Virus record (IMG/VR): IMGVR_UViG_3300046787_000408
Location: 124,001-188,000 of that record
Direction: 5' to 3' (one strand)
Length of the DNA: 64,000 bases
Part shown: positions 14,218-57,507 of the stretch, in pieces
How positions within the stretch are numbered: the first letter of the stretch is position 1
How the letters are laid out: each line of letters opens with the position of its first letter
The notes under the pieces: generated by a model
Told to the model about the DNA's origin: nothing
Seen by the model: only the letters and a program-made list of their open reading frames with translations
Database searches by the model: none
Made by a program: the position numbers and the translations under genes

Positions 14218-16808
14218 TGAGTTATACCCCACTGCAACTGATAGCAGGAGCAGGCGTGCTGGCCAATGTTGGCATTGCTAAACCTGTAGCACTGACCAGT
14301 TCAGTGGCATCTTATTTGTCATTGGCTTTTGTTGAAAACTTGATTGACACAGTATCGTTGGCCAATACCTGGGGAGTTAGTAACAGCATTGTGACCACAC
14401 TACAAACTCTGAGTGCTAACACTTGTCCTGCATTAAGTGCTAGTATTCCCACTGCCTATGCTAACACTGTGGTAAGTGTGCAGGAAGATCCTATTATTCC
14501 TGTGGTAGTTACCGGCGGCTTTGGAAACTTGATCATAAACACTGCTGATAGATATTTAGGCAACGGAGACTTGAGTCAATTTGCCGGGGTGTTTTCGGCC
14601 GCAGTAGGATATCAACAGCAAAGTACTGAATTGATCTACAGTGCAGTAAACGCTACTACATATCTTGGTCCTTCATTCACCAACATGACCAATTTGATCA
14701 CTTGCGACATGACTGGAGTATCTCTTGCACTGCCTGCCTTGGCATCTGATCTTGCACACTTGGGCAATGCATATGGCCTTGGTGAAATTGATCTAGTGCT
14801 TACACCTGCAGGATTGTTGCAACAACTGTCTAGGCAAGCTGGAATTGCACAAGGTACTATTCCTTCTGTTGAAATAGCCTTGCTGGCAGCAGGCCTTACA
14901 CCTGACGAAATTGATCAATTGGCTACTCCATCAGGCACACAAACGTTGACTCTGACAGAATTTGACGTGTTGCAAAAGAAAGCTTATCAGGGCATGCGCC
15001 AAGTCACAGGGGAAGGGCTACAGAATGTCTTGGACATACTAAGCGTTACCACACCTGGATTTGACTCTACCAACCCGTTGGTAAACATGAGTCAATTGCT
15101 GGACCCTGTACAAATATTCCCTGACAGCTATCCCTCTTTGTTGACTCCAACAGCCAGCGGATCTGCACTGATATACCAAGCTGACGCCACAATCAACCCT
15201 GCTATCATTGTTCAGAATCCAACTGGCTGCGACCAGCTGGCCAAGATTATTCCTCCGGACCAAGCAGTGGCCACAAGAGCAGTGGTAGCATCCTTGAGCC
15301 AGATCAAAGGAATTGAAAACATTGACCTGCCAGAACTGGCAGAGGCAGCGGCCAAGATTGAAACACTTAAAGGACTGCCGTTGGTGCAAGACTTGACTCA
15401 GCCAGTGCCAAGTACCACAACGACCTACTATCAAGGTTCTTTTGCTACAGGCACAGGAGAATTTGGTACCTTTACCATCAACGACTTGTTGGGTATTGCA
15501 TCAGGAGCTGGTGTGGCTGATCTAATGAGTGAAGTTACTGCAACTCTAAACTCCATGACACTGACCAGTTTGACCAGCATCTATTCTAACATGCTTGATA
15601 CTGTGCAAGGCGACTACGGTACATTTGCAGGGCCAGTGACTATTCCTAGTGGCCCGGCTGCAGGAGTGTATGCGGATGGTAATGATGCATTCACAACCGG
15701 CTTGATTCCAGCAGCCAATACCATAATTACTGGATTGATTTCCACGTACCCAGTAGAAACCACAACACTAAACTCAGCGTTCAACTCAATCTGTCAACAA
15801 ATTGAAACTGAAGGTGAGAACCAAAGTCGTGCTGGCATAAACTATGACGGTGTAACGCCGAATAGTCAAACCAGTGTGTTGAGTTTTGTGGGCGGCCTGG
15901 CACAGTACGGACAAAGTGATTCTCCCGGCGGCCCAGCTGAGTTTTTGAACACTGTGGCTGACACCAGTTACTTGAGTGGCCAAGCCATTGTGGGTGCATT
16001 GCGCGAAGGTAGAAATAATGCTGCATTGAACACTGCTGGAATCACTGCTATCAATCAAGTGCCAGGTACATGGCCAGGACCTGCTGATGTGGGATCTTCT
16101 GCTACAGTGATAACTGATCAAGTACCAGCACTGGCTCCACCAACTCCACTACCAGCACCTGAGTTTCAAACTCCTGAAAGTTCATTGTCCACTGACTACT
16201 CAGTAGCACAGGCAATAGATCCAACTGCCCCAATGCCAACTCAACAAGTTGCGATTTTGGGTATCAATGGCACTACAAATGCCACGGTGTTGGCTGCACA
16301 GTCATTTTTGTTGCAGGTGAGAATACTGCCAGCAGATAATAGTTTAACAGCAGTGATATCATCTTCAGCATCTGCAACCACTATGTCTGTCCGTGTAATT
16401 GACGCTGCGGCACTAGAAGGTGGAGTGTATTATTCAGTACCTGGATGGATGATTCCTACTTCAGGACTAGCAACTATCACAATCACTGTTGGTAGTGCGC
16501 AGGCCAGTACCTTGGTAAATGCAGTGGCCTCTATCACAACTGAATCAGTCACTGTAAACCAGACTGGCTGGTTCAACACACCCAACAACATTGCCAGCGG
16601 TAGCACCGCGGTGTTGACTATTACTGGTACCGCACTAGCAGCATATACCTATTCTGGTGCGTTTGGCAGCGGATCTGGCACATTGGACTCATCGGGTCAG
16701 GCCACAGTGTCTGGTCTTGCGGCACCACCAGTGGGCACTTACCAGATACAAGTAACGTATCCGGCTACAGGGAATGTGGTAACACAATTGTTTGCAGTGC
16801 ATGGTTGA
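14217..16808 (+). CDS. Large virion structural protein (baseplate/tail associated), C-terminal Ig-like beta domains
   Basis: T/G/A/S-rich ~860 aa, TAATG-coupled to the PAAR gene; start 14217 preferred. Confidence 0.6.
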   Translation: MSYTPLQLIAGAGVLANVGIAKPVALTSSVASYLSLAFVENLIDTVSLANTWGVSNSIVTTLQTLSANTCPALSASIPTAYANTVVSVQEDPIIPVVVTGGFGNLIINTADRYLGNGDLSQFAGVFSAAVGYQQQSTELIYSAVNATTYLGPSFTNMTNLITCDMTGVSLALPALASDLAHLGNAYGLGEIDLVLTPAGLLQQLSRQAGIAQGTIPSVEIALLAAGLTPDEIDQLATPSGTQTLTLTEFDVLQKKAYQGMRQVTGEGLQNVLDILSVTTPGFDSTNPLVNMSQLLDPVQIFPDSYPSLLTPTASGSALIYQADATINPAIIVQNPTGCDQLAKIIPPDQAVATRAVVASLSQIKGIENIDLPELAEAAAKIETLKGLPLVQDLTQPVPSTTTTYYQGSFATGTGEFGTFTINDLLGIASGAGVADLMSEVTATLNSMTLTSLTSIYSNMLDTVQGDYGTFAGPVTIPSGPAAGVYADGNDAFTTGLIPAANTIITGLISTYPVETTTLNSAFNSICQQIETEGENQSRAGINYDGVTPNSQTSVLSFVGGLAQYGQSDSPGGPAEFLNTVADTSYLSGQAIVGALREGRNNAALNTAGITAINQVPGTWPGPADVGSSATVITDQVPALAPPTPLPAPEFQTPESSLSTDYSVAQAIDPTAPMPTQQVAILGINGTTNATVLAAQSFLLQVRILPADNSLTAVISSSASATTMSVRVIDAAALEGGVYYSVPGWMIPTSGLATITITVGSAQASTLVNAVASITTESVTVNQTGWFNTPNNIASGSTAVLTITGTALAAYTYSGAFGSGSGTLDSSGQATVSGLAAPPVGTYQIQVTYPATGNVVTQLFAVHG

Positions 16809-24784: not shown

Positions 24785-26377
24785 ATGTTTCTTAGTTATA
24801 TCACTTTGGCTGTAGCACTGAGCCTGTCAGTTATTGCTGCCTACTACTCAATTGCAGGCCTGGCTGCTATTTTTGCTGCGGCCGTGATTCCCATTGTTGT
24901 AATGGGATCAATCCTAGAACTAGGCAAAGTTGTGGTCACACTGTGGCTGCATGAGTATTGGCGGCAGTGCCGTTTTCTCATGAAAATGTACTTGGTGCCT
25001 GCTGTGGCAGTGCTAATGCTAGTGACCAGCATGGGCATCTTTGGTTTCTTGAGCAAAGCACACTCAGACCAAAGCCTAGTGTCAGGCGATGTACAAAGCA
25101 AAATTGCAGTCTACGACGAAAAGATCAAGGTATCACAGGACAATATAGATGTTAATCGCAAAGCACTTAAACAACTCGATGAGGCGGTGGACCAAGTCAT
25201 GGGCCGCTCGAGTTCAGAAACGGGTGCAGACAAAGCCGTTGCTATACGCAAATCCCAAGCGAAAGAAAGAACTAGACTACTGGCTGAAATTGCAGCCGAG
25301 CAGAAAACAATTAGTGATCTCAGACAAGAACGAGCTCCCATTGCGGCTGAAGTACGCAAGGTTGAAGCTGAAGTAGGTCCTATCAAGTACATTGCTACAC
25401 TGATCTACGGTGACAACCCAGATGCCAACTTGCTGGAAAAAGCAGTGACATGGGTTATTATGTTGTTGGTTATAGTGTTTGATCCTTTGGCCATCATGAT
25501 GCTGTTGGCTGCAACAGAAAGTCTAAAGTGGGAAAAGCAAAGACTGTTTGACTTGCTCAAGATGCCTGTGCCGGAGCCAGAACCTGATCTTAAAGTGGTC
25601 AATCAAATGCTGGCCGCCGCGGCAACGATTCCTGAACCACAGGAGCCGGTTGTAGAGCCAAAGTCTGGGCCCATGAAGTTTTTTGATCCAGGCGAGCATC
25701 CCAAAGACTACGACGAGACTGAGGTGCCGGTGCCAGAACCTGTACCAGAGAAAACCCTACTAGAACAGCATCCGTATCTTGGACTAGGATTTTCAAACTT
25801 TAAAGATCTCAAGCCAATGCCGTATATACCCGAAAGAAAACTAGAAGTATATTCGGGCAACCCTGATGATTTCAAAGAGCCATGGAGTGAAGAAGACCGG
25901 CTACGTTTGGCCGCAGTTATGGAAACATTCCTTGACAAGAATCAAGATGAAGATCCTGAACTAAGCGATGACCATCCCAGTGTCAAAGCAGCCATGGTCA
26001 AATGGAAATTGGCCAACCCAGGTGCCACTCTCAAAGAACAACGTGCAATGTTTGCTCGTGGCGAGATTGCTGAATTACCTTGGCTAGCTCTAATTGATAA
26101 CAATGCTAGTGAATCAGGTTTTGGGTTGACATTGCCAGCTACTGCTCACAAAGGCGATACCTGGGTATTAACTAGTACATTGCCTAATCGGGTATATAAG
26201 TTTAATGGTAACAAGTGGATTTCAGTTGACAAAACTCAAACAGATAACTATACTTACAACGAAGCATACCTGGACCACCTAATAGCCAAGCTAGAATCTG
26301 GTGAATACGATATAGAATTGCTCAGCAGTAATGAGCAAGAACAGATTACTCAACGTCTACAAAAGAAAACAATATGA
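24785..26377 (+). CDS. Membrane protein: N-terminal TM helices, coiled coil, Pro/Glu-rich linker
   Basis: Hydrophobic N-terminus, heptad region, VFDPLA TM segment, PEPEP repeats. Confidence 0.7.
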
Positions 26378-27564
26378 AATCAAACGACTCTATCTACAAT
26401 TGCAGTTTCTGTGGCAAACACAAAGATGTTGTGACCAAACTAATCGTGGGCGTAAATGTCGCCATCTGTAACGAATGTGTGGACCTGTGCCAAAACTTAC
26501 TGGTAGACACCCCGGTAGAAATCACAGCCCCCAGCACACCCAGCCTGGATCCGCGCAAGATTCGTGAGCATCTAGACCAGTATGTGATTGGACAGGATCA
26601 AGCCAAGATCCTGTTGAGTGTGGCTATTGCCAATCACTACAAGCGCATTGCCAATCAAGATCCCGAACACGAAATTGAAAAAGCCAACATTCTCATGCTT
26701 GGCCCCACAGGCTCGGGCAAAACACTTTTGGCACGTACCGTGGCTCGGTATCTTGACGTGCCGTTTGTGATTGCAGATGCCACCAGCTTGACCGAAGCTG
26801 GATACGTAGGCGACGATGTGGAAAGCTTGATCTCAAGATTGTTTGCTGCATCAGGCGGTGACATTGAAAAGACACAACGTGGTATTGTGTTTGTGGATGA
26901 GATTGACAAGATCAGTCGCAAAAGCGAAGGCACTAGTATCACTCGTGATGTGTCCGGAGAAGGTGTGCAACAAGCCTTGTTAAAATTGGTAGAAGGTACC
27001 AAGTGCAGAGTCATGCCCACAGGCGGACGCAAACATCCTTCGGGGGAAACAGTAGAAATTGATACTACCAATATCTTGTTTATTGCAGGCGGCGCATTTG
27101 TAGGCATGGAAAATATTGTCAAGAGCCGTGTGAAAGGCACCAGTATTGGTTTCAGTGCTGATGTACGTACAGATGAAAAAGCTCAGCTGAGCCAGACCAC
27201 TCCTGATGACTTGGTACGCTTTGGCTTGATCCCTGAATTTGTGGGACGTTTTCCAGCTTGGGTTGCACTGCAAGAACTGGACAAAACAGATCTTGTGCGT
27301 ATTCTTAAAGAAGTCAAACACAACTATGTGAGTCAGTATCAGTGGTTGTTCAAGCAAGATGAAGTTGAGCTGGAGTTCTCAAAAGACAGCTTGGACTTGA
27401 TCGCTGAGCGCACTATCAAGAACAAAACAGGCGCACGTGGCCTGCACAGTGAACTAGAGCGTGTGTTGTTACCGCACATGTACAATCTAGCTCGCTATCG
27501 CTCAGATGGTATCAAGCATGTGGATATTGATCAAGCTCTGGTAAATAGTCCCAAGGAACTCTAA
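26374..27564 (+). CDS. clpX: ATP-dependent Clp protease ATP-binding subunit ClpX
   Basis: C4 zinc finger CSFC...[16 protein letters not shown] pore loop, [22 protein letters not shown] loop, TGARGL. Confidence 0.97.
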
Positions 27565-27570
27565 AGGATT

Positions 27571-27795
27571 ATGGAAAAATTACACGGTAGATCAGTATTG
27601 GTACAGGATGGCAACGTAGATCGTGCCTTGCGCAAGTTCAAGAAAAAGATAGCTGCTTCGGGGCTGTTGAATGACCTGCGTGATCGAGAGCACTATGTTA
27701 AGCCTACCACGGCTCGCAAACTCAAAGCAAGTGCTGCCAAGAGCCGCTGGCGCAAGAAAATGCGTGAACAAGAACTGCCCAAAAAACAGTTTTAA
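27571..27795 (+). CDS. rpsU: Ribosomal protein bS21
   Basis: VLVQDGNVDRALRKFKKK...REHYVKPTTARK; small and basic. Confidence 0.9.
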   Translation: MEKLHGRSVLVQDGNVDRALRKFKKKIAASGLLNDLRDREHYVKPTTARKLKASAAKSRWRKKMREQELPKKQF

Positions 27796-28031
27796 TGTAT
27801 ATTGAGTTTAGGTACAAACCTTCAAATATTCTCACAGCCGCAATCAACCATGAAATGCATGCATGGTCAGATCGCTACAGTATTCCTTACTTTACCAAAA
27901 CAGTCAAGTATGGCAAAAGATTCACGTTTGATGATGATGCACACTACAGTTTCTTTGCCATGACTTGGAATCCCACAATGTCTTTGCCCGAATACCACTT
28001 GATTGAACCAATGAAAATTGACAGAAAATGA
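27795..28031 (+). CDS. Hypothetical protein (LRW-family-like)
   Basis: FTFDDDAHYSFFAMTW motif; TAATG-coupled. Confidence 0.6.
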   Translation: MYIEFRYKPSNILTAAINHEMHAWSDRYSIPYFTKTVKYGKRFTFDDDAHYSFFAMTWNPTMSLPEYHLIEPMKIDRK

Positions 28032-28040
28032 GATTTCCTG

Positions 28041-28115
28041 TATAAATACATTTGTAGTGCCGATGGTCGGGCTACATTTCAAAACGTCATACTTGCTTAA
28101 TAGGAGAAAAACATG
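28041..28115 (+). promoter_or_regulatory. TATAAATA late-type promoter plus ROSE-like two-hairpin leader of hsp20
   Basis: TATAAATA at 28041; hairpin TGTAGT-G-CCGA-TGG-TCGG-GCTACA; SD hairpin CTTGCT-TAAT-AGGAG with bulged G. Confidence 0.65.
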
Positions 28116-28568
28116 ACAAAAACTCTAACCCTTCGTTCTTTCGACATTCCTGCAATTCACAAATTTGGTATCGGTTTCGATAACATGTTTGATGAACTCA
28201 TGCGTGTAAGTGCCCAACAAGGCAATACCAACTACCCACCTTATAACATTGTGCAAGTCAATGAAGACGAGTACATGATCAGTGTGGCTGTAGCAGGCTT
28301 TAGTCTTGACAACCTAAGCGTGACCAAGGACAAAAAAGTCTTGATCATTGAAGGCAAGCAAACTACAGGCGATGTTGCTGATGAAGAAGTAGTCAACTAC
28401 TTGCACAAAGGCATCAGCGAGCGCAGTTTCCGCAGAGAATTTCAATTGGCAGATCATGTGGAAATTACCAATGCACACCTTGAACTTGGTATCTTGAACG
28501 TGCGTTTAAAGCGTGAAGTCCCAGAAGAAGCCAAGCCAAAGAGCATTGCGATCACTTATACTTCTTGA
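28113..28568 (+). CDS. Small heat-shock protein, Hsp20/IbpA family
   Basis: IGFDNMF, NYPPYNI, ISVAVAGF, YLHKGISERSFRREFQLA, GIL motif. Confidence 0.95.
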   Translation: MTKTLTLRSFDIPAIHKFGIGFDNMFDELMRVSAQQGNTNYPPYNIVQVNEDEYMISVAVAGFSLDNLSVTKDKKVLIIEGKQTTGDVADEEVVNYLHKGISERSFRREFQLADHVEITNAHLELGILNVRLKREVPEEAKPKSIAITYTS

Positions 28569-28581
28569 TCACAACGTAAAT

Positions 28582-28610
28582 ACAGTGGCAAGGCAACTTG
28601 CCACTGTTTA
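28582..28610 (+). terminator. 11-bp hairpin ACAGTGGCAAG-GCAA-CTTGCCACTGT
   Basis: Perfect stem, GNRA loop, short T tail, after the hsp20 stop; a TAAATA lies just upstream, so it may instead be a 5' stabiliser. Confidence 0.55.
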
Positions 28611-28618
28611 GGAACACC

Positions 28619-29323
28619 ATGGCTAGAATAGAACACAATCTTATCTCTGCTGAAGAGATCAAGTTATTCAAACAATATTACAACACATTTTCTGCAGACA
28701 AATATGTAAATGCCACCACAAACGGTGAGGTCGCAGACGGTTGTGCCATGAATGATCAAGAACCTATAATTGATCATAGGCTGTTGATCGAACCTTCAAA
28801 AAGTCAGCAATGTTGGGATATTGTACAAAGAGTCACCCATCACTTTTTGCCCGGATGCGAAAATATATGGGCCAACTATCAGCGCCAAAGTTTGCCTCAC
28901 AGAACACATGTGGACGATTACTGCAAACATTTTGATGTCCCTACATATACTATTATTATTGCACTGGATACACATCCTGAATTCAATGTAATACTATGCA
29001 AAGAAGAAGCAGATAGTAACGCCCATCTAAGTCAGATGTTAAAGGATTGGGCTACACCTGCACCTGATCCAGCAACCAAGATCTGCAACATCAGTGAAAC
29101 AGAAGATCTTGAACATTCAATTGACCCAGTTCATCAGCAATACTTTCTAGACTGGTTGACACCCGATGGTGTTTTCCGTTATACTGCTGGTAGTGGTGTA
29201 TTCTTCTTGGCATCACAGATACATTGCTCAGGAAACTGGCACAAGTACAACAAGTTTATCAACAAAGACCTCGTGCAAATTCATGCACACTACAACAAAG
29301 GAACAAGCAATGTCTCAATCTGA
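28619..29323 (+). CDS. 2OG-Fe(II) oxygenase-like protein
   Basis: HRTHVDD (HxD) and distal IHCSG His; sits between hsp20 and clpS. Confidence 0.55.
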   Translation: MARIEHNLISAEEIKLFKQYYNTFSADKYVNATTNGEVADGCAMNDQEPIIDHRLLIEPSKSQQCWDIVQRVTHHFLPGCENIWANYQRQSLPHRTHVDDYCKHFDVPTYTIIIALDTHPEFNVILCKEEADSNAHLSQMLKDWATPAPDPATKICNISETEDLEHSIDPVHQQYFLDWLTPDGVFRYTAGSGVFFLASQIHCSGNWHKYNKFINKDLVQIHAHYNKGTSNVSI

Positions 29324-29621
29324 AACAAAAACACGTATCAAACCTTCTGAGGCAGTGAAAGAACCGCCAATGTACAAGGTGATTTATCTCAATGACAACC
29401 AAACTACCATGGAGTTTGTTGTAGAAAGTTTGATGGAGTTTTTTGACTACAACGAAGAAACTGCGTTTACTATTACCACAGATATTCACGAAGAAGGTTC
29501 AGCAGTGGTAGCAGTGCTACCATTTGAAATTGCTGAACAAAAAGGAATTGAAGTCACAGTGAGCGCTCGAGCTCTAAGTTTCCCGTTGCAGATCAAACTT
29601 GAGCCAGATACTGTTCAATAA
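29310..29621 (+). CDS. clpS: Clp protease adaptor ClpS
   Basis: PPMYKVIYLNDNQTTMEFVV, IHEEGSAVV, EIAEQK, FPLQIKLEP. Confidence 0.93.
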   Translation: MSQSETKTRIKPSEAVKEPPMYKVIYLNDNQTTMEFVVESLMEFFDYNEETAFTITTDIHEEGSAVVAVLPFEIAEQKGIEVTVSARALSFPLQIKLEPDTVQ

Positions 29622-36158: not shown

Positions 36159-36177
36159 TATGTTGCACTGCAACATA
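36159..36177. promoter_or_regulatory. Perfect palindrome TATGTTGCA-C-TGCAACATA, PhaR-box-like operator
   Basis: 9-bp arms, TGC-N3-GCA core, overlaps TAAATA (36176-36181) upstream of the phasin-like gene. Confidence 0.6.
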
Positions 36178-36257
36178 AATATATGTTACAATAACACATA
36201 GGACGCTGGATAGGCCGGGTTCTATAACTAACTCGCTTAAATTAGGAGAAACACATG
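36176..36257 (+). promoter_or_regulatory. Late-type promoter plus second ROSE-like leader
   Basis: TAAATA; hairpin ATAGGAC-G-CTGG-ATAGG-CCGG-GTTCTAT; CTCGCT-TAAATT-AGGAG. Confidence 0.6.
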
Positions 36258-36530
36258 TTTACAGCAGACGCAATCATCGACACCGTGCAAAACGGTAAAA
36301 AGCAATTTGTCAACACTTTCGTTCAGAACGAAACTGCAAAAGACGCAATGGTTAAATTCATTGACGCTCAAGCTGACTACACCAAGAAGGCAGCTAAAGT
36401 TGGAATGGACACATTTACCACTTTGACTTCAGAAGCAGTCAAAGCCGGACAAGAAGCCATGAAGTTTGATTACACCAAATTTGGTGAAGGCATTATGAAA
36501 GCTTACACAGCTACTACAGCCAAAAAGTAA
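36255..36530 (+). CDS. Phasin-like small amphipathic helical protein
   Basis: 91 aa, Ala/Lys/Thr-rich, no Cys or Trp, helical pattern resembling PHA granule proteins. Confidence 0.5.
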   Translation: MFTADAIIDTVQNGKKQFVNTFVQNETAKDAMVKFIDAQADYTKKAAKVGMDTFTTLTSEAVKAGQEAMKFDYTKFGEGIMKAYTATTAKK

Positions 36531-49713: not shown

Positions 49714-49983
49714 ATGCGTTTTAATCCAGAAACCAAAACATTCAAACTGTTTACCGCTCTTCGCACAGGCGAAGCCATCACTCCCGCAGCCGCTGCCAAG
49801 CGTTTCGGTATCAAGAACATGAGCGCTGAAGTCAGCCGTGTTCGTCAAGGAGGTTTCGCAGTGTATGCAAACACTCGCGTGGCCGGCAATGGTGTCAAGG
49901 TCACCGAGTACCAAATGGGTAAGCCAAGCCGCAAGTTGATTGCTGCCGGCTACAAGGCCATGGCATTGGGCTTGGTTGACTGA
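49714..49983 (+). CDS. Winged helix-turn-helix DNA-binding protein
   Basis: LRTGEAITPAAAAKRFGIKNMSAEVSRVRQGGFAVY pattern. Confidence 0.7.
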   Translation: MRFNPETKTFKLFTALRTGEAITPAAAAKRFGIKNMSAEVSRVRQGGFAVYANTRVAGNGVKVTEYQMGKPSRKLIAAGYKAMALGLVD

Positions 49984-50001
49984 TAAGCAGTTAGTATTAC
50001 C

Positions 50002-50030
50002 AAAAAGCCCGCTAATTTGGCGGGCTTTTT
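50002..50030 (+). terminator. Intrinsic terminator
   Basis: AAAAAGCCCGC-TAATTTG-GCGGGCTTTTT. Confidence 0.9.
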
Positions 50031-50031
50031 C

Positions 50032-50060
50032 TTGACCATTCGTGCAAGATACTGTATAAT
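50032..50060 (+). promoter_or_regulatory. sigma70-type promoter
   Basis: TTGACC-17-TATAAT-ACACATGTAAAGGAG. Confidence 0.85.
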
Positions 50061-56722: not shown

Positions 56723-57450
56723 ACCTACACAGACTACTAGACCGCTTGGAAGAGTGGTATCGCTATCCACAACCTACACAACAGCAAAAACAACTGCTAG
56801 GCCTGTACACCGATGTGATTGATACAGAGTTTACTGCAACTCGATTGGCCAGTGAGGAATCTGCTAGATATGTACTAGAACACATGCGAGCCGTTCCCAA
56901 CTTTGACACTGACTATGACCTTCACAAGTGGGTGTGCGAAACACAATTGCACCCCAGCTTGGACCGCGGTATGGTCTTGGAGTTTGGTGTTGCTACTGGT
57001 CGTACACTGAATCAGTTTGCATACTGGTTGCCAGATCAAATGGTGCATGGCTTTGATGGATTTGAAGGCTTGCCTGAAGACTGGACCAGCAGAATGCGCA
57101 AGGGATTCTTTGCAAGAAGCAAACTTCCTAGAGTTCGTAGCAACTGCAAGTTGCACGTTGGATGGTTTGATCAAACACTACCAGGCTTTGTACTACAACA
57201 AGGTCGGCGTCCTGTGCAATTGTTGCACGTGGATTGTGATTTGTACTCCAGCACAGTTACCGTTTTAAACAACTTGAAAGACAACCTTGTACCTGGCACA
57301 GTGATCATCTTTGACGAGTACATGAACTATCCCGGATGGCAATTGGACGAGTTCCGCGCTTGGCAAGAGCATGTGGCCAAGCACAAGATCAAATATGAAT
57401 ACATTGGGCGAGTCAGCAAACATCAAAAGGTTGCAGTACGTATCTTGTAA
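56719..57450 (+). CDS. TylF/MycF-like SAM-dependent O-methyltransferase
   Basis: LEFGVATG, GFDGFEGLPEDW, GWFDQTL, LHVDCDLYSS, IIFDEY. Confidence 0.88.
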   Translation: MNLHRLLDRLEEWYRYPQPTQQQKQLLGLYTDVIDTEFTATRLASEESARYVLEHMRAVPNFDTDYDLHKWVCETQLHPSLDRGMVLEFGVATGRTLNQFAYWLPDQMVHGFDGFEGLPEDWTSRMRKGFFARSKLPRVRSNCKLHVGWFDQTLPGFVLQQGRRPVQLLHVDCDLYSSTVTVLNNLKDNLVPGTVIIFDEYMNYPGWQLDEFRAWQEHVAKHKIKYEYIGRVSKHQKVAVRIL

Positions 57451-57469
57451 ACCAAAGTATTACTTTTTG

Positions 57470-57497
57470 AAAAACCCGCAAATTATGCGGGTTTTTT
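57470..57497 (+). terminator. Intrinsic terminator
   Basis: AAAAACCCGCA-AATTA-TGCGGGTTTTTT. Confidence 0.88.
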
Positions 57498-57507
57498 CAT
57501 TTAACAG

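What the first reader, a model, noticed from the sequence alone, without database searches (positions are those of the whole stretch)
28041..28115. ROSE-like RNA thermometer upstream of phage hsp20
Seen: the leader has a 5' hairpin (TGTAGT-G-CCGA-TGG-TCGG-GCTACA) and a 3' hairpin in which CUUGCU pairs with the SD AGGAG, leaving a bulged G and a U-G pair, 6 nt before ATG. Established: ROSE elements control small heat-shock genes in Proteobacteria through a U(U/C)GCU motif paired with the SD. Inference: this is a phage-encoded temperature-gated translation switch on a late-type (TATAAATA) transcript.
Basis: partly seen in the sequence, partly recalled or inferred. Interest (0 to 1): 0.65.

Follow-up and report, generated by a model that had tools for sequence, protein, structure and literature searches.

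The report
ROSE-like leader on phage hsp20
A giant freshwater T4-like phage carries, in front of its small heat-shock gene, a folded RNA leader related to the bacterial ROSE thermometers; the same leader turns up on phage hsp20 genes across many aquatic phages, which suggests these viruses gate their own chaperone production by heat or protein stress.

Summary

Rfam's ROSE_3 model (Pseudomonas ibpA type) matches this spot end to end but below threshold: 20.8 bits against a cut-off of 43. Relatives reach 32-34 bits.

The leader is kept in all 80 related jumbo-phage loci, with compensatory changes in hairpin I and a near-invariant anti-SD. A model built only from marine phage leaders finds it at 42 bits. 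It finds just one other site in the 300-kb genome: a second copy at 36198-36254, before a 91-aa gene.

Relatives place the same leader before dnaK and groES-groEL. 71 of 75 marine T4-like hsp20 loci have it too.

The genome is T4-like (gp23, gp55-like) and NATAAATA is enriched upstream of genes, so a late-type transcript is plausible.

Temperature gating itself is inferred by homology. Nearest-neighbour folding is not decisive, and Hsp20 self-repression through the leader is a live rival. I found no report of this element in phages.

The parts
28018..28023 (+). TTGACA, a -35-like hexamer 17 bp upstream of TATAAA. It may allow host sigma-70 use, but this is weak.
   Evidence: Read from the sequence. 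Several relatives also have TTGACA-17-TATAAA. The consensus scanner did not flag it, because the -10 lacks T at position 6.
28041..28048 (+). TATAAATA box, a T4/cyanophage-type late promoter motif. It places the RNA 5' end at about the base of hairpin I.
   Evidence: ATAAATA occurs 34 times in the 300-kb genome: 21 intergenic, 29 upstream of a same-strand gene. A gp55-like gene is present. The box keeps a fixed distance to hairpin I in relatives.
28053..28076 (+). Hairpin I: six pairs, a bulged G, four pairs (CCGA/UCGG) and loop UGG. It is a stable 5' stem-loop.
   Evidence: MFE fold. Compensatory changes at 5 pairs in 53 jumbo-phage leaders, and at all 9 pairs in 91 phage leaders; 0 of 500 shuffles reach the observed values. 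The apex UGCC..GGG nearly matches the ROSE_3 consensus.
28077..28085 (+). Single-stranded A/U-rich linker, variable in length and sequence among relatives.
28086..28090 (+). GUCAU, the 5' arm of an outer helix that pairs with AUGAC (start codon plus two bases).
   Evidence: MFE and centroid folds from 4 to 50 C. Invariant in 46 of 49 distinct leaders, although the flanking linker varies. The GUCAA variants carry ACU instead of ACA at codon 2, which moves the helix outward by one step.
28092..28097 (+). Anti-SD CUUGCU (ROSE motif UUGCU). G28095 is the bulged G.
   Evidence: 99.6% of cells are pair-capable in both alignments, and U-G alternates with C-G at the third pair. RNAalifold predicts this register.
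28098..28101 (+). Loop UAAU of hairpin II.
28102..28106 (+). Shine-Dalgarno AGGAG, 6 nt before the ATG.
28113..28117 (+). AUGAC: the start codon plus two bases, forming the 3' arm of the outer helix.
28113..28568 (+). hsp20 gene (151 aa), an IbpA-type small heat-shock protein. It keeps the residues that E. coli IbpA needs to bind its own 5' UTR: R93 corresponds to R104 here, and Y34 to Y41.
   Evidence: Pfam HSP20 5.8e-15. Alignment with Salmonella IbpA/IbpB and Pseudomonas IbpA. PMC10474464.
28582..28607 (+). An 11-bp inverted repeat just after the stop codon, probably a transcript-end hairpin. The T-run on the + strand is weak.
   Evidence: the scanner reported it on the - strand; sequence.
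36174..36192 (+). Promoter-like boxes of the second copy: CATAAATA (36174-36181) and TGTTACAAT (36184-36192).
   Evidence: Conserved in the orthologous leaders of five related genomes.
36198..36254 (+). Second ROSE-like leader. Hairpin I' is 36198-36225 (AUAGGAC-G-CUGG-AUAGG-CCGG-GUUCUAU). The anti-SD CUCGCU is 36232-36237 and the SD AGGAG is 36244-36248. ATG is at 36255.
   Evidence: R1 22.9 bits. The independent model R2 gives 30.2 bits, E 3.5e-4, one of only two hits in the genome. Rfam ROSE_3 gives 21.3 bits. Orthologous copies are present in G001-G005.
36255..36530 (+). 91-aa gene under the second leader. It is predicted to be all-helical and belongs to a virus-only family of unknown function.

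Best explanation
This is a phage-borne, minimal ROSE-type translational control leader.

The hsp20 mRNA most likely starts a few bases after the TATAAATA box, so hairpin I sits at its very 5' end. There it would stabilise the transcript and help the weak downstream structure to fold. This role for hairpin I is inferred.

Downstream, CUUGCU pairs imperfectly with the SD AGGAG, with a bulged G and a U-G pair. GUCAU pairs with the start codon. At low temperature the 30S subunit is therefore kept off.

Because this structure is marginal, warming opens it and Hsp20 is translated. About -6 kcal/mol is predicted for the whole of hairpin II at 20 C and -3 at 37 C. The SD/anti-SD core alone is far weaker than in Pseudomonas or Salmonella.

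The same device is reused in this phage lineage on a 91-aa gene, and in relatives on dnaK and a groES-groEL cassette. It therefore acts as a small phage heat-shock regulon.

Shown: the sequence, homology to ROSE_3, conservation, covariation of hairpin I, pair-capability of the SD helix, and the association with chaperone genes. Inferred: the transcription start, occlusion in vivo, and the temperature response.
For: Homology to ROSE_3:
- ROSE_3 is the only Rfam family hitting the site. The match is full length, with the model's AUG on the start codon.
- The same holds for relatives at 23-32 bits, and for Melnitz at 34.1 bits, E 3.5e-4.
- Positive controls behave: Pseudomonas ibpA 69.2 bits, Salmonella ibpA with ROSE_2 94.9 bits.

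Conservation and structure:
- All 80 related loci keep the leader.
- Hairpin I covaries, and the SD helix is 99.6% pair-capable, with U-G/C-G alternation.
- RNAalifold recovers the register with the bulged G.

Specificity:
- Model R2, built without any sequence of this lineage, hits only the two leaders in 300 kb, at 42.4 and 30.2 bits. It hits once per genome, at hsp20, in cultured phages.
- The anti-SD/SD pattern is found twice per genome and never in the control.

Context:
- The leader also precedes dnaK and groES-groEL in relatives.
- The SD and AUG are among the more occluded in the genome, rank 10 of 140.
- Hairpin II cores are graded: phages -0.6 to -3.9, Pseudomonas and Salmonella about -6 kcal/mol at 20 C. 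That fits cooler habitats; the window's runs are freshwater.
- Experimental precedent exists for two-hairpin ROSE-like thermometers: PMC3669281.
Against: - No experiment bears on temperature.
- All Rfam scores are below the 43-bit cut-off.
- In this copy the ROSE register has only about 0.7% of the predicted ensemble. ViennaRNA prefers a shifted 3-bp pairing.
- Predicted opening is gradual and occurs at high temperature: the SD G's are 0.12 unpaired at 37 C and 0.35 at 50 C.
- Single-sequence z-score is only -1.48.
- The SD helix has no true compensatory changes. It could hardly have any, because the SD is fixed.
- Hairpin II lacks the upper G-C pairs that matter in P. putida.
- A virus of lake bacteria rarely meets abrupt heat shocks, so heat may not be the physiological signal.
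Confidence: 0.55

Rival explanations
1. The leader is chiefly an operator for Hsp20 itself, as with IbpA-type self-repression. Free Hsp20 binds its own structured 5' UTR and blocks translation. When aggregating proteins (for instance the late flood of capsid proteins) titrate Hsp20 away, translation rises. On this view the element senses protein load rather than temperature. This may act together with thermal melting.
For: - E. coli and other gamma-proteobacterial IbpAs repress their own translation through the ROSE-type 5' UTR. This needs R93 and an aromatic residue at position 34 (PMC10474464).
- The phage Hsp20 and other phage Hsp20s keep both residues. IbpB, which lacks the activity, does not.
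- The apex of hairpin I (UGCC-loop-GGG, closing U-G, bulged G) is nearly invariant from Pseudomonas to cyanophages while the lower stem covaries. That pattern is expected of a recognised site.
- A late-type promoter would put expression at the time of bulk structural-protein synthesis.
Against: - No binding data exist for any phage Hsp20.
- R93 is widely conserved in alpha- and gamma-proteobacterial IbpAs, so its presence is weak evidence.
- The same leader precedes dnaK, groES-groEL and a 91-aa gene. That would require Hsp20 to act in trans on several mRNAs. This is possible, since E. coli IbpA also acts on rpoH mRNA (paper title and abstract only, PMC10410725).
Confidence: 0.22
2. The leader is a constitutive expression cassette with no sensing. 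It would be a 5' stem-loop that protects the mRNA, followed by a strong ribosome-binding site. In this case CUUGCU is conserved for another reason, such as inheritance of the whole cassette or a site for some other factor.
For: - 5' hairpins are known mRNA stabilisers (discussed in PMC3669281).
- Predicted hairpin II is very weak: core -0.6 kcal/mol at 20 C.
- The SD helix has no true compensatory changes.
- In some metagenome contigs the promoter plus hairpin I is joined to other downstream sequence, which hints at cassette shuffling.
Against: - CU(U/C)GCU stays at a fixed short distance from the SD across phage leaders whose linkers and loops have diverged completely. It stays even where the downstream gene differs.
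- It occurs nowhere else upstream of an SD in six genomes, apart from one in-gene site in the window's own genome.
- The same motif is functional in bacteria.
Confidence: 0.15
3. The resemblance is due to chance: an AT-rich phage leader that happens to contain a hairpin and a hexamer complementary to the SD.
For: The single-sequence fold is not significant (z -1.48). The Rfam E-value is 0.068, below the cut-off.
Against: See the conservation, covariation, independent-model and pattern-specificity results.
Confidence: 0.02

Closest known systems
Short ROSE-like RNA thermometers of Pseudomonas ibpA (Rfam ROSE_3, RF02523; Krajewski et al. 2013, PMC3669281)
   Same: - Two hairpins only.
- A stable hairpin I at the 5' end, with nearly the same apex (GAUGCCGA..UCGGGUC).
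- The SD in hairpin II paired with U(U/C)GCU in the same register, with a bulged G.
- Sits directly before an IbpA-type gene.
- Leader of about 60 nt.
   Different: - Scores 20.8 bits, against 69 for a true Pseudomonas member and a cut-off of 43.
- Hairpin II lacks the two to four loop-proximal pairs, so its core is about 5 kcal/mol weaker at 20 C.
- The start codon is predicted to be paired (GUCAU/AUGAC), whereas it is free in Pseudomonas.
- The promoter is a T4-type TATAAATA box, not sigma-32.
- It is carried by a virus and reused on genes other than small heat-shock genes.
Classical ROSE (rhizobia) and ROSE_2 (enterobacterial ibpA)
   Same: The anti-SD U(U/C)GCU with a bulged G opposite the SD, located in small heat-shock gene leaders.
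   Different: Those elements have three to four hairpins and a long thermosensing hairpin. Here ROSE_2 gives no hit, while Salmonella ibpA scores 94.9 bits.
Short leaders of Shewanella/Photobacterium ibpA (seen here)
   Same: AUUGCUU-loop-AAGGA, with the loop directly after the anti-SD, as in the phage form. These are also aquatic organisms, often cold-adapted.
   Different: They are bacterial and have different upstream hairpins. They were not analysed further here.
Known phage RNA thermometers: lambda cIII, SPbeta blyA, and a fourU element before a sigma-70 gene of a gut phage (listed in PMC11182007)
   Same: Temperature-sensitive mRNA structures encoded by phages.
   Different: They have unrelated structures and none is ROSE-type. 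They control lysis-lysogeny or lysis genes, not chaperones.
IbpA self-repression through its 5' UTR (PMC10474464)
   Same: An IbpA-type protein with R93/Y34 equivalents, downstream of a ROSE-type leader.
   Different: It is untested for any phage protein.
Promoter-stem-loop cassettes of T4-type phages (PeSLs; from my own knowledge, not checked here)
   Same: A promoter followed by a conserved stem-loop, which may move between gene contexts.
   Different: PeSLs are many-copy early-promoter repeats. Here there are only two copies per genome, and each is tied to an anti-SD/SD module.

Membership tests
ROSE-like RNA thermometers (general definition) | Located in the 5' leader of a small heat-shock (alpha-crystallin) gene | tested here: met
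   The leader ends at the ATG of an ORF with Pfam HSP20 5.8e-15.
ROSE-like RNA thermometers (general definition) | SD in the 3'-proximal hairpin, paired with a U(U/C)GCU motif | tested here: met
   CUUGCU 28092-97 faces AGGAG 28102-06. The variant UCGCU occurs in the second copy and in most marine phages. The helix is 99.6% pair-capable, and RNAalifold predicts it.
ROSE-like RNA thermometers (general definition) | A bulged G opposite the SD | tested here: met
   G28095. The G is invariant in the aligned leaders.
ROSE-like RNA thermometers (general definition) | One or more stable hairpins 5' of the thermosensing hairpin | tested here: met
   Hairpin I at 28053-76, supported by covariation.
ROSE-like RNA thermometers (general definition) | Translation repressed at low temperature and released by heat; hairpin II melts | not testable with these tools
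   Only nearest-neighbour predictions are available. Hairpin II is -6.4 kcal/mol at 20 C and -3.0 at 37 C, and the SD G's open gradually.
Rfam ROSE_3 (RF02523) | Covariance-model score at or above the gathering cut-off of 43 bits | tested here: not met
   20.8 bits for the window. Relatives score 23-32, Melnitz 34.1, and the second copy 21.3. The control, Pseudomonas ibpA, scores 69.2.
Rfam ROSE_3 (RF02523) | Start codon single-stranded | tested here: not met
   AUG is predicted to pair with GUCAU from 4 to 50 C. This is a prediction only.
Rfam ROSE_3 (RF02523) | Sigma-32 promoter upstream | tested here: not met
   No CTTGAA..CCCCAT-type boxes are present. Instead there is TATAAATA with TTGACA 17 bp upstream.
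Rfam ROSE_3 (RF02523) | G-C pairs clamping the SD/anti-SD core on the loop side | tested here: not met
   The loop UAAU follows directly after C96-G103 and U97-A102. Compare the consensus CuGAuuauUCaG.
T4-type late transcription unit | TATAAATA-type box upstream, a gp55-like sigma in the genome, and the motif enriched before genes | tested here: met
   The transcription start itself has not been mapped. A metatranscriptome contig of a relative begins near 28058 and has no coverage upstream, but that is only a hint.
IbpA-type self-regulating sHsp | Arg at the position of E. coli R93 and an aromatic residue at Y34 | tested here: met
   R104 and Y41 in the alignment with Salmonella IbpA. IbpB has Q at the Arg position.
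IbpA-type self-regulating sHsp | The protein binds its own 5' UTR and represses translation | not testable with these tools
   This needs a binding assay and a cell-free translation assay.

The most novel reading that the evidence does not exclude
T4-like phages of aquatic bacteria, including the cyanophages for which hsp20 is a core gene, carry their own ROSE-derived regulon. One cis element, with a sequence-conserved hairpin I apex, is placed on hsp20, on dnaK, on groES-groEL and on a 91-aa helical protein.

On this reading it works mainly as an Hsp20-titrated sensor of protein aggregation. It would tie chaperone synthesis to the load of virion proteins late in infection, with temperature only modulating the set point.
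Probability: 0.2. Interest if true: 0.85.

Novelty: new variant of a known kind. Interest (0 to 1): 0.7.

Why it matters
Very few RNA thermometers are known in phages. A 2024 paper lists lambda cIII, SPbeta blyA and one fourU element. None is ROSE-type and none controls a chaperone.

Here a ROSE-derived leader appears in several phage groups:
- It is a standard part of hsp20 in this jumbo-phage lineage: all 80 loci examined have it.
- 71 of 75 marine T4-like viral loci have it.
- It is present in cultured phages: S-CAM9, P-RSM1, Melnitz and Sinorhizobium phage Phosso by model hit; HTVC115P by a weaker model hit (23.6 bits); HTVC008M by eye only.

hsp20 is a core gene of marine cyanomyoviruses (PMC3037559), and its role and regulation are unclear. 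A conserved sensor in its leader gives a direct, testable handle on when and why these viruses make their own chaperones. It also bears on how infection responds to water temperature. The cultured phages offer ready experimental systems.

The element also extends the ROSE family to a minimal, low-stability form and to new client genes.

Tried and rejected
- DNA search of the region against 50,697 phage records found nothing.
- ROSE_3 at the gathering threshold on the whole genome found nothing, and nothing in the 14 control genomes either, so that call was uninformative.
- Single-sequence folding statistics and the genome-wide ranking of SD/AUG occlusion are suggestive only (z -1.48; rank 10 of 140). 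I do not lean on them.
- Melting in silico from 4 to 50 C does not show a sharp transition.
- The consensus sigma-70 scanner did not call the TTGACA-17-TATAAA pair. I keep it only as a weak possibility.
- A regular expression meant to find further promoter-plus-hairpin-I copies was badly designed and missed even the known site, so I discarded it.
- The best bacterial hit, a Haliscomenobacter MAG at 56% identity, has the phage-type leader and phage-type upstream sequence. I take it for a phage contig binned into the MAG, not a donor or proof of host.
- The other bacterial IbpAs are 40-48% identical and come from alpha- and gamma-proteobacteria. No donor can be named.
- The 91-aa protein gave no Pfam or PHROG family. 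Atlas leads point to phasin and PHB families but score under 0.9. The profile search against PDB found nothing credible. The AlphaFold model is poor (pLDDT 59), so no fold search was made.
- Two papers on large aquatic phages with chaperones or bS21 describe other lineages.
- The third CTYGCT-AGGAG site of the genome (G000 14680, minus strand) lies inside a coding region, with no hairpin I and no promoter box. I set it aside as chance.
- The costly protein searches were not used, no other genetic code was needed, and read laying was given 1,101 letters.
Full report
**1. What is in the sequence**

The stretch 28041-28117 reads, in order:
- TATAAATA, 28041-48
- four bases
- a hairpin, UGUAGU-G-CCGA-UGG-UCGG-GCUACA, 28053-76
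- a nine-base A/U-rich linker
- GUCAU, 28086-90
- A
- CUUGCU, 28092-97
- UAAU
- AGGAG, 28102-06
- AAAAAC
- AUGAC, 28113-17

The ATG opens a 151-aa ORF, 28113-28568, with a clear Pfam HSP20 domain (5.8e-15).

Its neighbours are:
- a ClpX-like ATPase, 26374-27564
- ribosomal protein bS21, 27571-27795
- a 78-aa ORF that ends ten bases before the TATAAATA box
- ClpS, 29370-29621

An 11-bp inverted repeat follows the hsp20 stop codon at 28582-28607.

**2. What kind of genome this is**

- The window is part of a 299,983-bp virus record, estimated 81% complete.
- It has a T4-type major capsid gene (Pfam Gp23, 325 bits).
- It has a gp55-like late sigma factor: 33% identity to T4 gp55 over residues 21-115, E 5.6e-7.
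- ATAAATA occurs 34 times in the genome. 21 sites are intergenic, although only 11% of the genome is non-coding by my crude gene call. 29 lie within 150 nt upstream of a same-strand gene, often only 5-25 nt before the start codon.
- A late-type (N)ATAAATA promoter class is therefore real in this phage, and the hsp20 box is an exact TATAAATA.
- TTGACA lies 17 bp upstream of TATAAA. Host sigma-70 use cannot be excluded, but the -10 lacks the conserved final T and the scanner did not call it.
- Relatives mostly carry a composite box, TATAATAAATA.
- Sequencing runs that hold the stretch are freshwater and lake metagenomes.

**3. Is it ROSE-like?**

A permissive Rfam scan of 27800-28400 gave one relevant hit: ROSE_3 (RF02523) at 28051-28118. 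It covers model positions 1-69 of 69, at 20.8 bits against a cut-off of 43, with E 0.068.

The alignment puts hairpin I on hairpin I, ACUUGCU on ACUcGCu, AGGAG on aGgAG, and the model's AUG on the start codon. The apex of hairpin I, UGCCGA-GUCGGG, matches the consensus almost letter for letter.

The same family, and no other family that recurs in a meaningful way, hits the orthologous leaders of relatives:

| Leader | ROSE_3 bits |
|---|---|
| L021 | 31.9 |
| L004 | 31.8 |
| L080 | 26.9 |
| L010 | 23.0 |
| Methylophilales phage Melnitz | 34.1 (E 3.5e-4) |
| Phage C48C1 | 26.8 |
| P-RSM1 | 21.8 |
| S-CAM9 | 20.0 |

Controls behave as expected. A Pseudomonas ibpA leader scores 69.2 bits with ROSE_3, and Salmonella ibpA scores 94.9 bits with ROSE_2.

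In the whole 64-kb window the only ROSE_3 hit listed is the second copy described below. There are no spurious hits.

The element is therefore a consistent, sub-threshold relative of ROSE_3. By Rfam's criterion it is not a member.

**4. Conservation and covariation**

*The related lineage.* The Hsp20 protein recovered 80 IMG/VR loci at 76-87% identity, many on contigs of 320-364 kb. All 80 keep the leader, in 49 distinct versions.

*Hairpin I* changes by compensatory substitutions:
- CCGA/UCGG to CCCA/UGGG to CUCA/UGAG
- GUAG/CUAC to GUGG/CCAC
- an entirely different stem in L054

*The rest of the leader.* The linker varies freely. GUCAU, CUUGCU and AGGAG stay.

*Pair counts on the lineage alignment.* On the covariance-model alignment of 53 leaders, 5 of the 9 pairs of hairpin I show double changes, and no shuffle in 500 reaches the observed values. 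That alignment leans towards the structure. The SD helix is 99.6% pair-capable, with only one-sided changes (U-G to C-G or U-A). The outer helix is 97% paired.

*An outer-helix shift.* The three GUCAA variants carry ACU instead of ACA at codon 2. That moves the outer helix outward by one step. It counts as a single evolutionary event.

*An independent model.* I built a second model, R2, only from marine phage leaders, using no sequence of this lineage.
- It hits the window's leader at 42.4 bits (E 3.1e-7).
- It hits one other site in the 300-kb genome and nothing else, even at E up to 10.
- In whole genomes of cultured phages it hits once, at hsp20: S-CAM9 55 bits, P-RSM1 41.3, Melnitz 39.5, Phosso 24.7. 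HTVC008M gives no hit.

*The 91-leader alignment.*
- All nine pairs of hairpin I show compensatory changes.
- The SD helix is 99.6% paired, with C-G in 78 leaders and U-G in 11 at the third pair.
- RNAalifold, which predicts its own structure, returns hairpin I and the ROSE register with the bulged G.

**5. More copies, and what they control**

It has:
- the boxes CATAAATA and TGTTACAAT
- a hairpin of the same design, with a lower stem, a bulged G, CUGG/CCGG and a five-base loop, 36198-36225
- CUCGCU, 36232-37
- AGGAG, 36244-48
- ATG at 36255

Each of five near-complete relatives has exactly this pair of copies.

*Pattern specificity.* The plain pattern CTYGCT-N3-9-AGGAG-N4-10-ATG occurs exactly twice in each relative and never in the reversed control. 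In the window's own genome a third match lies inside a gene, without a hairpin or promoter, and is probably chance.

*The gene after the second copy.* It encodes a conserved 91-aa protein. The protein is predicted to be all-helical and belongs to a virus-only family. It has no Pfam or PHROG match. Phasin-like leads are weak, and the structure model is poor.

*Relatives with other chaperone genes.*
- In relative L054 a promoter-plus-leader copy precedes dnaK (Pfam HSP70, 848 bits). A second, diverged leader precedes hsp20.
- In L004 and L018 a copy, followed by a 14-codon ORF, precedes groES-groEL (Cpn10 3e-29, Cpn60 1.9e-74). This cassette sits between clpX and the hsp20 leader.

The element is thus tied to chaperone genes, not to hsp20 alone. 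The window's genome has no Hsp70 gene.

**6. Spread beyond this lineage**

A scan seeded with a cyanophage-first Hsp20 alignment returned 80 further viral loci. In 71 of the 75 with usable upstream sequence, the leader has:
- a TATAAATA or TATAAT box
- a hairpin GGAUGCC-loop-GGGUCC
- CUCGCU
- a short loop
- AGGAG

The same design is visible by eye in pelagiphages HTVC115P and HTVC008M, in cyanophages S-SSM6b and S-SCSM2R, and in Sinorhizobium jumbo phage Phosso.

The nearest bacterial IbpA genes are 40-48% identical and come from alpha- and gamma-proteobacteria. They carry ordinary ROSE leaders. Shewanella and Photobacterium have a short form, AUUGCUUAAUACAAGGA, that resembles the phage one. 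No donor can be named.

**7. Energetics**

*Whole leader.* ViennaRNA keeps the same minimum-energy fold from 4 to 50 C: hairpin I, the outer helix GUCAU/AUGAC, and a 3-bp CUU/GAG pairing. The three SD G/A/G positions go from 0.01 unpaired at 4 C to about 0.1 at 37 C and about 0.3 at 50 C.

*Hairpin II with the outer helix.* It is worth -6.4 kcal/mol at 20 C and -3.0 at 37 C. The exact ROSE register holds about 0.7% of the ensemble. From my own knowledge, the solved ROSE helix contains non-canonical pairs that the nearest-neighbour model does not score.

*Isolated SD/anti-SD core at 20 C:*

| Source | kcal/mol |
|---|---|
| This window | -0.6 |
| Jumbo-phage relatives | -0.9 to -2.1 |
| Marine phages | -1.4 to -3.9 |
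| Pseudomonas | -6.1 |
| Salmonella | -6.4 |

This grading fits sensors tuned to cooler water, but it is an inference.

*Ranking within the genome.* Among 140 genes of the genome with a recognisable SD, hsp20 ranks tenth for combined SD and AUG occlusion.

**8. Transcript evidence**

All runs available are assembled contigs, which cannot prove an RNA end. In one freshwater metatranscriptome, contigs like this stretch (one is a clear relative, one nearly identical) cover it only from 28058 onward. The deepest contig carries Illumina adapter sequence plus ten unmatched bases immediately 5' of 28058. There is no coverage at all over 27600-28043. That is what a transcript starting at the base of hairpin I would give, but I count it only as a hint.

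**9. Mechanism and rivals**

*Preferred explanation: a thermolabile ROSE-type block of the SD and start codon.* It rests on homology to experimentally proven two-hairpin thermometers. In those, hairpin II alone confers regulation and hairpin I stays closed (PMC3669281).

*Main rival, which may act together with it: IbpA-type self-repression.*
- E. coli, Cedecea and Vibrio IbpA bind their own ROSE-type 5' UTR.
- This needs R93 and an aromatic residue at position 34 (PMC10474464).
- The phage Hsp20 keeps both, as R104 and Y41. So do the Melnitz protein and the two cyanophage-type proteins aligned, P-RSM1 and viral contig L139. IbpB does not.
- The near-invariant apex of hairpin I, from Pseudomonas to cyanophages, would suit a protein-recognition site.
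- For a virus, sensing the protein load late in infection makes at least as much sense as sensing heat.

*Other rivals.* A purely constitutive leader and chance are much less likely, for the reasons given under the rival explanations.

**10. Novelty**

Full-text searches found no paper that links cyanophage hsp20 with a thermometer. None describes a ROSE-type element in a phage.

A 2024 paper counts lambda cIII, SPbeta blyA and one fourU element as the known phage thermometers.

The library misses many subscription journals, so absence there is not proof. I rate this a new variant of a known kind: ROSE-derived, but viral, minimal, driven by phage promoters, and extended to new client genes.

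Noticed in passing
window 36174-36530: A second ROSE-like leader (hairpin I', CUCGCU, AGGAG) sits before a conserved 91-aa, all-helical, virus-only protein. An orthologous pair of leaders is present in five near-complete relatives.
   Followed up: yes
L054:980-2931 and L004:774-2900: Relatives carry the same promoter-plus-leader module before dnaK (L054). In L004 and L018 it comes before a 14-codon ORF followed by groES-groEL. In both cases the cassette is inserted just upstream of the hsp20 leader.
   Followed up: yes
window 26374-29621: A proteostasis and translation cluster: clpX-like, ribosomal protein bS21, a 78-aa ORF, hsp20, a 234-aa ORF and clpS. One paper reports Hsp20 as the commonest neighbour of phage bS21 genes (PMC9723584).
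   Followed up: partly
G000 whole genome (e.g. 28713, 37681, 68880, 110659): (N)ATAAATA boxes lie 5-25 nt before many start codons, which implies very short late leaders. The 60-nt structured hsp20 leader is the exception. A gp55-like gene is at G000:19007-19285.
   Followed up: partly
L189 (contig NZ_JBBAKG010000031.1, labelled a Haliscomenobacter MAG): A 70-kb contig binned into a Bacteroidota MAG carries an hsp20 56% identical to the window's. Its leader and upstream sequence are of the jumbo-phage type. It is probably a phage contig in the bin and at most a weak host hint. The phage's strong SD use argues against a Bacteroidota host.
   Followed up: partly
L004:2921-3003, L075:2921-3003: Rfam freshwater-2 RNA (RF02980) gives weak hits (27 bits, cut-off 49.9). 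They rest mostly on the shared ribosome-binding string AAGGAGAAAACAAAUG. That motif may stem from the same group of freshwater phages.
   Followed up: no
window 49971-50033 and 57426-57500: Sub-threshold Trp_leader matches (32.5 and 27.1 bits, cut-off 41). They are probably terminator-like hairpins rather than attenuators.
   Followed up: no
window 28036-28078 (run X20): In lake metagenome contigs, the promoter box plus hairpin I of relatives is followed by other sequences. One continues with another CUUGCU-AAGGAG leader, and two continue with unrelated sequence. This suggests that the promoter-hairpin module moves between contexts.
   Followed up: no
L067:2935-3012: One relative has AGAAG instead of AGGAG. 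This keeps pairing with the anti-SD (U-A instead of U-G) but weakens the SD. It is either a sequencing error or a natural down-mutant.
   Followed up: no
G000:C1 about 14590-14680, minus strand (outside the window): The only other CTTGCT-N-AGGAG-N-ATG site in the genome lies at the end of an upstream gene, with no hairpin I and no promoter box. It is probably chance.
   Followed up: yes
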